64,000 bases of DNA, taken from Euprymna scolopes (Eukaryota). The stretch lies in NCBI GenBank assembly GCA_053919585.1, contig CM132786.1, one strand, 5' to 3'. The translations under genes were made by a program, and so were the position numbers. Each line of letters starts with the position of its first letter. The first letter of the stretch is position 1. Under the pieces are notes generated by a model. That model ran no database searches, was not told the DNA's origin, and saw only the letters and a list, made by a program, of their open reading frames with translations. Of the stretch, positions 59,405-63,673 are shown one piece after another.

Positions 59405-59476
59405 GCCGTGATCGTCTACAGGTTAGGACCCCACGTTGTGGCCGTGCTAACCTAGGTTCGAATCCTGGTCACAGCA
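59405..59476 (+). tRNA. tRNA-His(GTG) variant or young pseudogene
   Basis: Close to the insect-type tRNA-His sequence as recalled, about 5 substitutions incl. acceptor- and anticodon-stem mismatches; intact B box; T run downstream. Confidence 0.75.
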
Positions 59477-62515: not shown

Positions 62516-63376
62516 CCACTGTCGTAGGAACTATCAGGTTTGTATTTGCAAAATAAATTGAAAAAACTCAAGTATATAAAACTCAAAAGTAGAAAAAAAA
62601 ACTCAAATATAAAAGTACTATATAAGTTAATTCATATGGGTTGCTAATCATTTAAAAAGGCCTCGGTGTTATAGTTCAATAAATTAGAATAATATATATA
62701 TATATATATAGGAGAACATTGGCTACAAAGCAAGTATAAATATTTCACTTAGTACTTTCGAAAAGATAGCAATATATAAGAATTAAATCGGCAGAGAGCA
62801 TAAAAGTGCAGATATATAAATAGATGCATACTTATAGAAACCAAATATAAAATAAAATAATGGAATATGGATTTATTCGTAAGCATTTAAGATTTAAATA
62901 ATTAAACCTTATTCGCTTATACTAAATAAATAATACATGAGCTACCCCTTCAATAAATATAAGAATGAATTAAAGAAAAAAAAACCTTTGTGAGTTACTC
63001 CCCTTAGATACATCAGAAATAGCTGATCCGGCCCGAAAGTCATGAAAATTGAGGACCAGATAGAACATAATAAATTTAACAGATCATTAAACAAAAAATA
63101 TATTAATTAAATAATAAGTAATTGATAAATCGATATTGAAATAATATATATATATATAAATAGGTAGAAACAAACTATAAATAAATAAACAATAAACATT
63201 ATTAAAAATATAAATATGCGCTCTTTTTTTCCAAACAGAAAACAAAGGCTGACGAGAGTCTAATACTATTTATTATTAACTGTTTCCTCTTATATTGGCC
63301 TTTAACTAACGACACCGATGTTTTTTTCTGACACACTGCATAGTTTTTAAACACACACACACACACACACACACAC

Positions 63377-63424
<48 letters not shown>

Positions 63425-63483
63425 AATACCACAGCCAAACAACGTCGCAGCCCACAAGAGCCATGAGCGTCAACGAACCGGAA

Positions 63484-63528
63484 GTCCAAGACTCGAGTTT
63501 CGCCCTTATTTGGGCTCATCAGTTAGAC
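63484..63528 (-). ncRNA. Complete-core type I hammerhead ribozyme, family F
   Basis: GUCUAA-CUGAUGA-GCCC-AAAUAA-GGGC-GAA-ACUCGAGU-C-UUGGAC: all core positions canonical, GUC triplet, palindromic stem III. Confidence 0.92.
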
Positions 63529-63541
63529 ACATCTGAACTCA

Positions 63542-63553
63542 GGATTCGAAACC
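63542..63553 (-). promoter_or_regulatory. Pol III B-box-like motif just upstream of the hammerhead
   Basis: Minus strand ggtttcgaatcc vs consensus GGTTCGANNCC; no A box retained. Confidence 0.5.
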
Positions 63554-63595
63554 CGAGCCTGTGGAATTTATTATATACTATCTCTTACATTCTGA

Positions 63596-63673
<78 letters not shown>

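What the first reader, a model, noticed from the sequence alone, without database searches (positions are those of the whole stretch)
63421..63570. Pol III B-box followed by a canonical hammerhead: Sm-alpha-like SINE/ribozyme
On the minus strand a B-box-like ggtttcgaatcc lies ~14 nt before a perfect-core hammerhead (loop II AAAUAA, palindromic stem III ACUCGAGU, GUC site), followed by a ~60-nt tail ending in (AT)n. This mirrors the tRNA-promoter-plus-hammerhead design of schistosome Sm-alpha repeats, here in what appears to be a different animal lineage. The copy is 5'-truncated.
Basis: partly seen in the sequence, partly recalled or inferred. Interest (0 to 1): 0.74.

Follow-up and report, generated by a model that had tools for sequence, protein, structure and literature searches.

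The report
Truncated hammerhead retrozyme copy in (TA)n
This is a short, dead fragment of an abundant 413-base non-coding jumping element that joins a tRNA-like promoter piece to a self-cutting hammerhead RNA; the design is known from blood flukes and animal "retrozymes", so it is a new example of a known kind in a large mollusc genome.

Summary
Window 63528..63484 (-) is a type I hammerhead (Rfam 45.8 bits against a cut-off of 34), with a B-box-like T-arm remnant 13 nt upstream and a 73-nt tail that ends in (AT)n.

The copy is 0.35 of a 413-nt unit that is circularly permuted and tandemly inserted. The genome holds 5,216 copies of the family's ribozyme. Full units carry a tRNA-Ala(UGC)-like block with A and B boxes (Rfam tRNA 34 bits) 11 nt before the ribozyme, and no TTTT anywhere on that strand.

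Insertions are two-armed. Both outer ends are element 3' ends in (TA)n, and arms of 0.1 to 4 units meet head-to-head. This is the scar typical of Penelope-like elements, which are very abundant here and have the same layout: minimal hammerhead, about 65-nt tail, (TA)n.

Seventeen raw RNA-seq reads carry a non-templated T-run abutting the predicted cut site. That suggests cleavage in vivo but is ambiguous.

The kind is known (metazoan non-LTR retrozymes, Sm-alpha). This scan has already met this same family several times on other DNA of this genome. Pol III transcription, circular RNA and the Penelope partner are inferred, not shown.

The parts
63416..63560 (-). Main arm of the insertion: unit positions 342-412 followed by 1-73 of the 413-nt family unit, which is 0.35 unit. 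It holds the T-arm remnant, the whole hammerhead and the tail.
   Evidence: blastn of the natural unit L076:2087-2498 against the window gives 342-412 -> 63560..63490 (94.4%) and 1-73 -> 63489..63416 (91.9%). The best other genomic copies are 95-97% identical.
63538..63557 (-). T-arm remnant of the tRNA-like module: stem CTCGGG/CCTGAG with loop TTTCGAAT. It includes the B-box-like GGTTTCGAATCC at 63553..63542. The A box is missing from this copy.
   Evidence: Read directly. In full copies the same block aligns to tRNA model positions 49-63 with one inserted U in the T loop.
63484..63528 (-). Type I hammerhead ribozyme. Helix I is GUCUAA/UUGGAC, helix II is GCCC/GGGC with loop AAAUAA, and helix III is 2 bp plus the palindromic loop UCGA. 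The predicted cut follows GUC, between 63490 and 63489.
   Evidence: Rfam RF00163, 45.8 bits, E 1.4e-8, model 1-45. The dimer fold is 7.9 kcal/mol more stable than two monomers, and the canonical monomer fold is not the monomer's MFE.
63416..63489 (-). Tail, the 3' cleavage-product side (unit 1-73). It ends ...GGTATTTATTATATA where it merges into (AT)n. This is one of the family's two alternative 3' termini.
63561..63599 (+). Inverted arm: a fragment of the element's own 3' end (unit about 55-95, tail end plus the first part of the linker) in the opposite orientation, meeting the main arm head-to-head at the truncation point.
   Evidence: blastn gives unit 55-95 -> window 63559-63599 on the + strand, 92.7%. 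The same two-armed layout is seen in L076-L079 and in many other loci.
63351..63415 (.). Target microsatellite on the tail side: (AT)n at about 63379-63415, then (GT/CA)n at 63351-63376.
63596..63670 (.). Target microsatellite on the other side: a short (TA)4 at 63596-63603, overlapping the end of the inverted arm, then (CA)n up to about 63670.

Best explanation
The feature is a dead, two-armed, 0.35-unit insertion of a non-autonomous retroelement of the animal 'non-LTR retrozyme' kind. The family's repeating unit is 413 nt. In order it holds the tail (1-73), a linker (74-107), a 190-nt body, a tRNA-Ala(UGC)-like block with A and B boxes (about 296-368), and a type I hammerhead (374-413 plus 1-6).

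Proposed cycle:
(1) RNA polymerase III, using the internal A and B boxes, transcribes the plus strand through one or more units. This is possible because the unit has no TTTT terminator on that strand. Inferred.
(2) Two hammerheads pair through the palindrome ACUCGAGU into the active dimer and cut after GUC, releasing 413-nt monomers with 5'-OH and 2',3'-cyclic phosphate ends. The fold is shown in silico, and one read signal is compatible with cutting in vivo. Cleavage itself is not shown.
(3) A host tRNA ligase (RtcB) circularises the monomer. Inferred from published work on other retrozymes.
(4) A Penelope-like element's reverse transcriptase and GIY-YIG nuclease nick a (TA)n microsatellite. 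They prime on the AU-rich end of the tail, at ...UUAUUAUAUA or about 25 nt later at ...CUGAAAAUC. They then copy round the circle or along a multimer from both sides of the break. This gives two arms of variable length, up to about 4 units, that meet head-to-head. The architecture is shown. The enzyme is inferred.

The window copy keeps an intact ribozyme but has lost the A box and has no second ribozyme nearby, so it is very probably inert.
For: Ribozyme: Rfam 45.8 bits. There are 5,216 family ribozymes within 2 mismatches against 0 for the control.

Unit and tandem structure: same-strand ribozyme spacing is 413 nt in 7 loci. A fixed 33-nt linker joins the tail to the body. There are 1,255 tail-linker-body junctions against 0 for the control, including runs with 411-413-bp spacing.

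Two-armed insertions: in L076-L079 both outer ends are element 3' ends in (TA)n, and the arms are 0.2 to 3.9 units long. Nearly every full copy is preceded by a 5'-truncated direct copy and often by an inverted one.

One template per insertion: unit identity is 99.1% within an array against 96.2% between arrays. The opposite-arm unit is 99% identical to its partner arm, and some units are 100% identical, which means very young insertions.

tRNA module: Rfam tRNA 33.5-34 bits (cut-off 29) covering the D, anticodon (UGC) and T arms. The A-box-to-B-box distance is 41 bp.

Pol III compatibility: there is no TTTT on the plus strand of the unit, nor at any unit position in 10% or more of copies. Dinucleotide shuffles expect 4.9, with P(none) = 0.009. 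The minus strand has two TTTT.

Constraint: mismatch rates are 2.1% in the ribozyme core and helices and 1.6% in the B box, against 4.1-4.8% in tail, linker and body and 17% in loop II plus N7. Across subfamilies 15-20% apart, the ribozyme changes only in loop II, at N7, by C>U giving G.U, and by U.G>U-A.

RNA: the unit folds at -145.8 kcal/mol, z = -4.2. The element is present in poly(A) RNA-seq contigs of two studies. In the raw-read run, the best-supported loose end is 17 reads with a non-templated T-run abutting the first base after the predicted cut. The genome does not template that junction.

Penelope context: there are at least 15,397 GIY-YIG candidates, many in ORFs of about 806 aa, with RVT_1 plus GIY-YIG confirmed. 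Their 3' ends have a minimal hammerhead, an about 65-nt tail, then (TA)n, with inverted 3'-end copies upstream.

Literature: PLE insertions are tandem or inverted, prefer (TA)n, and show a 30-40-bp one-sided extension (PMC8557442). Retrozymes are proposed to be mobilised by PLEs (PMC7229834; 10.64898/2026.07.22.740005).
Against: No sequence similarity was found between the unit and 12 Penelope loci, so no specific autonomous partner is identified.

The B box has a 1-nt insertion relative to the consensus, and the acceptor stem is lost, so TFIIIC binding is not assured.

The RNA evidence comes from oligo-dT libraries. Most raw reads imply minus-strand RNA under the usual reading of such libraries. 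The T-run junction can also be read as an antisense RNA polyadenylated at that base. Table 6 lists no place where many molecules begin or end.

Circular RNA was not and could not be shown.

The copies compared for constraint are related to one another and were chosen as best matches, so the P values are nominal.

Homogeneous arrays could also arise from multimeric linear transcripts of a homogeneous source array rather than from a circle.
Confidence: 0.62

Rival explanations
1. The same retrozyme, mobilised in the same Penelope-type way, but the tRNA-like block is only a relic of the element's origin, for example a tRNA-derived SINE captured next to a hammerhead. On this reading it does not act as a Pol III promoter, and the RNA comes from Pol II or from read-through of host transcription units.
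For: The B box carries a 1-nt insertion and the acceptor stem is gone. The A box is no better conserved than neutral parts (4.0% against 4.2%). The element is found in poly(A)/oligo-dT RNA libraries. Published animal retrozymes are described without any Pol III module (PMC7229834).
Against: The plus strand has no TTTT in 413 nt of T-rich sequence (P about 0.009), while the minus strand has two. The B box is the best-conserved block outside the ribozyme core (1.6%). A-box-to-B-box spacing is 41 bp, within the working range for type 2 Pol III promoters (my own knowledge). The D, anticodon and T arms still fold and still score as tRNA after 15-20% divergence between subfamilies.
Confidence: 0.27
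2. A classical tRNA-derived SINE copied by a LINE. On this reading a Pol III transcript starts at the tRNA head, is reverse-transcribed from a LINE-like 3' tail, and happens to carry a hammerhead as a passenger.
For: A tRNA-like block with A and B boxes is present. Copies are dispersed and often 5'-truncated.
Against: The tRNA block is internal to a circularly permuted unit, with 190 nt of conserved body always upstream, joined through a fixed linker to the previous tail. There is no poly(A) or LINE-type tail. Both ends of an insertion are element 3' ends in opposite orientation. Arms are multi-unit.
Confidence: 0.05
3. A satellite DNA spread and homogenised at the DNA level by unequal crossing-over or segmental duplication, with the hammerhead as an incidental motif.
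For: Tandem arrays with a 411-413-bp period and high within-array identity exist.
Against: There are more than 5,000 ribozyme copies on all large contigs. Arrays are tiny, at most about 4 units per arm. Termini are always at the same two unit positions inside (TA)n. Arms are inverted and meet at variable 5' truncations. The ribozyme core is constrained.
Confidence: 0.03

Closest known systems
Metazoan non-LTR retrozymes (Cervera and de la Pena 2020, PMC7229834)
   Same: Type I hammerhead with a 2-bp helix III capped by a palindromic tetraloop. Short non-coding tandem units of 150-450 bp, from partial dimers to multimers. GC below 50% (46% here). Strongly self-paired unit RNA. Coexistence with Penelope-like elements that carry minimal hammerheads. 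Thousands of copies.
   Different: The unit (413 nt) is at the upper end of the published size range. It contains a recognisable tRNA-derived block with A and B boxes directly before the ribozyme, and no TTTT on that strand. The 2020 paper never mentions Pol III. Circular RNA is not demonstrated here.
Schistosoma Sm-alpha / Sj-alpha SINE-like elements (Ferbeyre et al. 1998, cited through PMC2770079 and PMC8490949)
   Same: A few-hundred-bp non-coding repeat (about 335 bp against 413 bp) that combines a tRNA-related region with a type I hammerhead, present both dispersed and in tandem in thousands of copies.
   Different: Different phylum (mollusc against flatworm). Different tRNA source by similarity (Ala-UGC-like here, Gln-TTG-like for Sm-alpha according to PMC2770079). 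No sequence comparison with Sm-alpha could be made here, so common descent is untested and independent assembly of the same design is likely. The Sm-alpha hammerhead cleaves efficiently as a monomer (PMC6155905), whereas this one has the dimer-type weak helix III.
Penelope-like elements (PLEs) and their pseudo-LTR hammerheads (PMC4209133, PMC8557442)
   Same: Partial tandem plus inverted 5'-truncated insertion architecture. (TA)n target. A one-sided 25-35-nt terminal extension. A hammerhead about 65-100 nt from the 3' end. Palindromic helix III implying dimeric action.
   Different: No ORF, so the element is non-autonomous. The hammerhead is canonical, whereas the PLEs of this genome have minimal variants with U at core position 3. 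There is no sequence similarity to the PLE loci sampled.
Newt and salamander satellite 2 hammerhead repeats
   Same: About 330-bp tandem units with a type I hammerhead that works best as a dimer (PMC6155905).
   Different: Here the copies are mostly dispersed 0.1-4-unit insertions in microsatellites, not long satellite arrays, and they carry a tRNA-like module.

Membership tests
Hammerhead ribozyme, type I (Rfam RF00163) | Score at or above the curated gathering threshold over the whole model | tested here: met
   45.8 bits against 34, model 1-45, E 1.4e-8.
Hammerhead ribozyme, type I (Rfam RF00163) | Conserved core CUGANGA ... GAAA, cleavage triplet NUH, three helices with helix I open | tested here: met
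   CUGAUGA-G, CGAAA, GUC. Helix I is 6 bp, helix II 4 bp, helix III 2 bp plus the UCGA loop.
Hammerhead ribozyme, type I (Rfam RF00163) | Self-cleavage of the RNA | not testable with these tools
   Only an indirect and ambiguous read signal at the predicted cut.
Metazoan non-LTR retrozyme | Type I hammerhead inside short (150-450 bp) tandem repeats, from dimers to multimers | tested here: met
   413-nt unit. 1,255 unit-to-unit junctions. Arrays up to about 4 units per arm. The window copy itself is only 0.35 unit.
Metazoan non-LTR retrozyme | Non-coding, low GC (below 45-50%), no LTRs | tested here: met
   GC 46.1%. The longest open frame in a trimer is 97 aa. No terminal repeats other than the tandem units. 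PBS and PPT motifs were not specifically searched.
Metazoan non-LTR retrozyme | Expressed as monomeric linear and circular RNA | tested here: inconclusive
   Present in RNA-seq contigs of two studies and in raw single-cell reads. A T-run junction lies at the cut site. Circularity cannot be seen with these data.
Metazoan non-LTR retrozyme | Coexists with autonomous PLEs carrying minimal hammerheads | tested here: met
Sm-alpha / Sj-alpha family (by descent) | Sequence homology to Sm-alpha | not tested
   No Sm-alpha sequence was available through the tools, so only the design was compared.
Sm-alpha-type design (tRNA-like Pol III module plus type I hammerhead) | A and B boxes in a tRNA-like region upstream of the ribozyme in full copies | tested here: met
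   Rfam tRNA 33.5-34 bits, positions 10-63. The A box is within TTGCTCAGTTGG. The B box GGTTTCGAATCC has one inserted T. The block ends 11 nt before the hammerhead. The window copy retains only the B box.
Sm-alpha-type design (tRNA-like Pol III module plus type I hammerhead) | Transcription by RNA polymerase III | not testable with these tools
   Indirect support only: no TTTT on the plus strand of the unit (P about 0.009).
Classical LINE-dependent tRNA-SINE | tRNA-derived head at the 5' terminus of the element | tested here: not met
   The tRNA block is at unit positions about 296-368, always preceded by about 190 nt of conserved body and the linker.
Classical LINE-dependent tRNA-SINE | LINE-derived or poly(A) 3' tail and simple head-to-tail single insertions with target-site duplications | tested here: not met
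   3' ends merge into (TA)n at two alternative unit positions. Insertions are two-armed and inverted. Target-site duplications cannot be judged inside microsatellites.
Penelope-like element (autonomous) | ORF with RT and GIY-YIG endonuclease | tested here: not met
   The unit has no ORF. The element can only be a non-autonomous passenger.
Penelope-type insertion | Partial tandem plus inverted 5'-truncated copy, microsatellite target, one-sided 30-40-bp extension (PMC8557442) | tested here: met
   The extension here is about 25-33 nt, the linker.

The most novel reading that the evidence does not exclude
The family is a self-promoting retrozyme. A tRNA-derived Pol III promoter sits inside the circle-forming unit, and the unit has been purged of Pol III terminators. 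Any new insertion longer than about 1.3 units would therefore carry everything needed to make more template RNA: a promoter plus two dimerising ribozymes. The 17 T-run reads would mark real ribozyme-made 5' ends in living cells. If so, this would be a currently active circular-RNA retroelement in a lineage whose published genome papers report almost no SINEs, assembled independently of schistosome Sm-alpha.
Probability: 0.35. Interest if true: 0.6.

Novelty: new member of a known kind. Interest (0 to 1): 0.4.

Why it matters
For this 150-base feature alone, very little: it is an inert fragment.

The family behind it is a clean natural example of the retrozyme life cycle, with unusually legible scars. 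These include two-armed insertions, two defined priming positions, arrays copied from a single template, and some units that are 100% identical.

The family adds a Pol III-type module, which so far has been discussed mainly for schistosome Sm-alpha. If that module drives transcription, it would explain how such non-coding circles keep themselves expressed wherever they land.

It also shows that repeat annotations reporting almost no SINEs in large decapodiform-type mollusc genomes (PMC13218726, PMC8967140) may hide thousands of small tRNA-related retroelements among unclassified repeats. This applies only if the genome is indeed of that group, which I did not verify.

Tried and rejected
(1) ARAGORN on seven full-copy loci found no tRNA. 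The block lacks an acceptor stem, and only the covariance model sees it.

(2) My first pattern for the hammerhead in the window had the wrong spacer length and found nothing. It is irrelevant.

(3) I first took L004:1266 to be the element's 5' end. That was wrong: the unit is circularly permuted, and the apparent 5' end follows a fixed 33-nt linker from the previous tail.

(4) Partner search: blastn of the unit against 12 GIY-YIG loci found nothing at E <= 0.01, and Rfam found no hammerhead there. Only a minimal, non-canonical hammerhead was seen by eye. Both the PLE and this element end in ...AATC before (AT)n. That is too short a match to count.

(5) A supposed second tRNA-plus-hammerhead family in L008 and L025 was not supported by Rfam and was dropped.

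(6) Test for recurrence of the design in unrelated families: all 8 top genome-wide hammerheads turned out to belong to this same superfamily. I therefore have no independent evidence for convergence. Earlier scan notes claim other families, but I did not test them.

(7) A genome-encoded T-run as the source of the 17 reads: rejected.

(8) A second tRNA-like piece at the start of the body (GCTCGCTTGGTTAGC...): no Rfam support even at E <= 10.

(9) The original Sm-alpha paper (PMC108972) is not held. Its statements about Pol III boxes are from my own memory.

(10) The organism was not identified. 'Mollusc, probably a decapodiform cephalopod' rests on run labels, the genome size of 5.9 Gb and at least 46 large contigs.

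Full report
OBSERVATION.

- A B-box-like GGTTTCGAATCC lies at 63553..63542, inside a T-arm-like hairpin.
- A 13-nt spacer follows.
- A 45-nt type I hammerhead lies at 63528..63484.
- A tail then runs into (AT)n at about 63416.

Rfam's Hammerhead_1 model matches end to end with 45.8 bits against a gathering score of 34, E 1.4e-8 for the whole window. The core is perfect and the predicted cut after GUC falls between 63490 and 63489.

As a monomer the RNA does not prefer the active fold. The canonical structure scores -7.5 kcal/mol against an MFE of -11.8. Two molecules pairing through the palindrome ACUCGAGU reach -31.5 kcal/mol, which is 7.9 kcal/mol better than two monomers. This is the 'dimeric' class of animal hammerheads described in PMC4209133 and PMC6155905.

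WHAT IT IS A COPY OF.

The genome is 5.9 Gb in 925 contigs, and the window is C4:174282001-174346000. It holds 5,216 copies of this family's 39-nt ribozyme segment within two mismatches, against none for the reversed control. The window's exact variant (loop II AAAUAA) is a minority, and AAAUGA dominates.

Other copies continue upstream of the window copy's start. They carry a block, GCTCAGTTGGTAGAG...CTTGC-CTTGCAT-GCAAG...CTCGGG-TTTCGAAT-CCTGAG, that the Rfam tRNA model scores at 33.5-34 bits against a cut-off of 29. The match covers positions 10-63: the D arm, an anticodon arm with UGC (Ala) in the anticodon position, and the T arm with one inserted U. There is no acceptor stem. ARAGORN does not call it. 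The block ends 11 nt before the hammerhead.

THE UNIT IS CIRCULARLY PERMUTED.

I first took L004:1266 to be a sharp 5' end. The sequence before it in almost every other copy is a fixed 33-nt linker that follows the previous copy's tail. The real repeating unit is 412-413 nt, and same-strand ribozymes are 413 nt apart in seven loci.

Counted from the first base after the cut, the unit reads as follows:

| Part | Unit positions |
|---|---|
| Tail | 1-73 |
| Linker | 74-107 |
| Body | 108-295 |
| tRNA-like block | about 296-368 (A box from 308, B box from 349) |
| Hammerhead | 374-412 plus 1-6 |

The genome has 1,255 tail-linker-body junctions against 0 for the control, some in runs 411-413 bp apart. 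The unit is non-coding (longest frame 97 aa in a trimer) and 46% GC. Its RNA is strongly structured: -145.8 kcal/mol, z = -4.2, with 0 of 100 shuffles as stable. Apart from the tRNA and hammerhead matches, nothing else in the unit matches any Rfam family even at E <= 10.

HOW COPIES ARE INSERTED.

Four multi-unit loci (L076-L079) show one plan.

- Both outer ends of an insertion are element 3' ends.
- These ends lie at unit position 72-74 (...TTATTATATA) or at 96-101 (...CTGAAAATC), each merging into (TA)n.
- From each end an arm of 0.2 to 3.9 units runs inward.
- The two arms, in opposite orientation, meet at arbitrary 5' truncation points.

The same plan in miniature is seen around most of the 59 sampled copies and in the window itself. 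The main arm (unit 342-412 plus 1-73) lies at 63560..63416 on the minus strand. A 36-39-nt inverted arm (unit about 55-95) lies at 63561-63599 on the plus strand. (TA)n/(CA)n microsatellite flanks both sides.

Units within one insertion are 99.1% identical on average, with several pairs at 100%, against 96.2% between insertions. A unit on the opposite arm is 99% identical to its partner arm. Each insertion was therefore copied from one homogeneous template, and some are very recent.

Partial tandems with an adjacent inverted 5'-truncated copy, a (TA)n target and a one-sided 30-40-bp extension are the published hallmarks of Penelope-like elements (PMC8557442).

PENELOPE CONTEXT.

The genome gives at least 15,397 first-look candidates for the GIY-YIG domain. 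Many sit in open frames of about 806 aa, often as inverted pairs. One such ORF contains RVT_1 plus a C-terminal GIY-YIG.

The dominant family's 3' end reads ...CUC UUGAAGA AGCCCG-loop-CGGGC GAAAC GUU GAG..., followed by about 65 nt of tail and then (TA)n. This is a minimal hammerhead with the ACGU palindrome in place of helix III and U at core position 3. Inverted 3'-end copies lie upstream. The layout is the same as in this element: ribozyme, 65-100-nt tail, (TA)n.

There is no sequence similarity between the unit and the 12 PLE loci I sampled, and Rfam does not see their ribozymes. The partner is therefore inferred from architecture only.

IS THE tRNA MODULE A PROMOTER?

For:
- The A and B boxes are 41 bp apart.
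- The plus strand of the T-rich unit has no TTTT at all, and no unit position has one in 10% or more of copies. Dinucleotide shuffles expect 4.9, and only 0.9% of them have none. The minus strand has two.
- The B box is the best-conserved block outside the ribozyme core: 1.6% mismatches against 4.1-4.8% in tail, linker and body.

Against:
- The B box has a 1-nt insertion.
- The A box is no better conserved than neutral sequence.
- The acceptor stem is gone.

I rate Pol III transcription at roughly 60-65%.

IS THE RIBOZYME CONSTRAINED AND USED?

Core and helix positions differ at 2.1%, against 4.2% in the tail and 17% in loop II plus N7. The nominal Fisher P is 1e-9, but the copies are related and were chosen as best matches. 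All eight of the genome's top-scoring hammerheads that I sampled belong to this superfamily, at 79-96% identity to the unit. Across them the ribozyme changes only in loop II, at N7, by C>U giving a G.U pair in helix II, and by U.G>U-A in helix I.

RNA evidence:
- Five runs on record as RNA, from two studies labelled invertebrate and mollusc metagenome, hold about half of the element's sampled words. Their contigs cover it. This does not prove transcription.
- In the one raw-read run (single-cell, oligo-dT), the best-supported loose end is 17 reads with a T-run that lies immediately before L034:1807. The consensus is 30 Ts and the median loose length is 59.
- L034:1807 is the first base after the predicted cut, since the GUC ends at 1806. 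The next two bases are T, so the junction is ambiguous by up to 2 nt.
- The chance that a given junction falls at either cut site of the 562-nt stretch is about 1%.
- The genome does not encode such a junction. A pattern search gave 3 hits against 3 for the reversed control. Only one hit is a family copy, with an 11-T run.

Two readings of those 17 reads remain. In the first, cDNA of plus-strand RNA stopped at a ribozyme-made 5' end and was then extended on the bead oligo-dT. In the second, an antisense RNA is polyadenylated at that base. I favour the first because of the coincidence with the cut site, but I cannot separate them. Most raw reads imply minus-strand RNA under the usual reading of such libraries.

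COMPARISON WITH WHAT IS KNOWN.

The family meets the published definition of metazoan non-LTR retrozymes (PMC7229834) in every feature I could test. Expression as circles could not be tested.

It shares its design, though not demonstrably its descent, with Sm-alpha, which is tRNA-Gln-like according to PMC2770079.

[quoted passage not shown] It covers vertebrates only and says so.

For cephalopods I found only an uninterpreted count of 235 Hammerhead_1 hits in the giant squid (PMC6962438), and statements that decapodiform genomes have almost no SINEs (PMC13218726, PMC8967140).

The organism was not identified here.

EARLIER NOTES OF THIS SCAN.

The scan has already met this same 413-bp tRNA-Ala/hammerhead family, and similar families, many times on other DNA of this genome. 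My unit length, (TA)n target and Penelope-type scars were derived independently and agree with those notes.

New here are the terminator depletion, the one-template-per-insertion result, the matching 3' layout of the dominant PLE, and the read signal at the cut site.

VERDICT.

The window copy is an inert fragment. The family is a new member of a known kind and is moderately interesting. No N runs were touched.

Noticed in passing
window 59405-59476 (+): tRNA-His (GTG), found by ARAGORN and by Rfam (43.2 bits), with a T-run about 10 nt downstream. It looks like an ordinary tRNA gene unrelated to the element.
   Followed up: partly
window 18874-18945 (+): Weak Rfam tRNA match (31.1 bits) that ARAGORN does not call. 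Probably a tRNA-derived repeat or pseudogene.
   Followed up: no
L068 (G000:C19:88032443-88035694) and L062, L064, L066-L072: The dominant Penelope-like family has at least 15,397 GIY-YIG candidates genome-wide. Its 3' end has a minimal hammerhead with U instead of C at core position 3 (UUGAAGA), an about 65-nt tail, then (TA)n. A second family (L065) has UUGAAAA, the U3-A8 covariant described in PMC4209133.
   Followed up: partly
L061 (G000:C553:29970-33197): This small contig gave the best GIY-YIG score (46.4 bits). The DNA after the domain reads like continuous coding sequence, not a PLE 3' UTR. It may be a bacterial uvrC-like gene on a contaminant contig.
   Followed up: no
L025:81-196 and L080:1130-1246: 5S rRNA-like matches (43.3 and 36.5 bits) close to family copies. 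These look like 5S-derived repeats, as reported in large numbers for the giant squid (PMC6962438).
   Followed up: no
L075 (G000:C39:34814136-34817162), about 1501-1640: A single family copy that begins exactly at the base after the hammerhead cut, preceded by an 11-T run. It could be a retro-copy of a cleaved RNA or of an RNA tailed at that base.
   Followed up: partly
L004:1005-1236: A long, near-perfect hairpin of about 230 nt that Rfam scores as MIR841-like (87 bits, below that family's threshold of 200). It lies just upstream of a family copy and is probably an inverted-repeat transposon (MITE-like).
   Followed up: no
L034:1320-1881, table 2: In the raw single-cell run, reads whose implied first mate lies on the plus strand outnumber the others about 3-8 to 1 over most of the unit. 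Under the usual reading of oligo-dT libraries this points to antisense RNA. It is unexplained.
   Followed up: no
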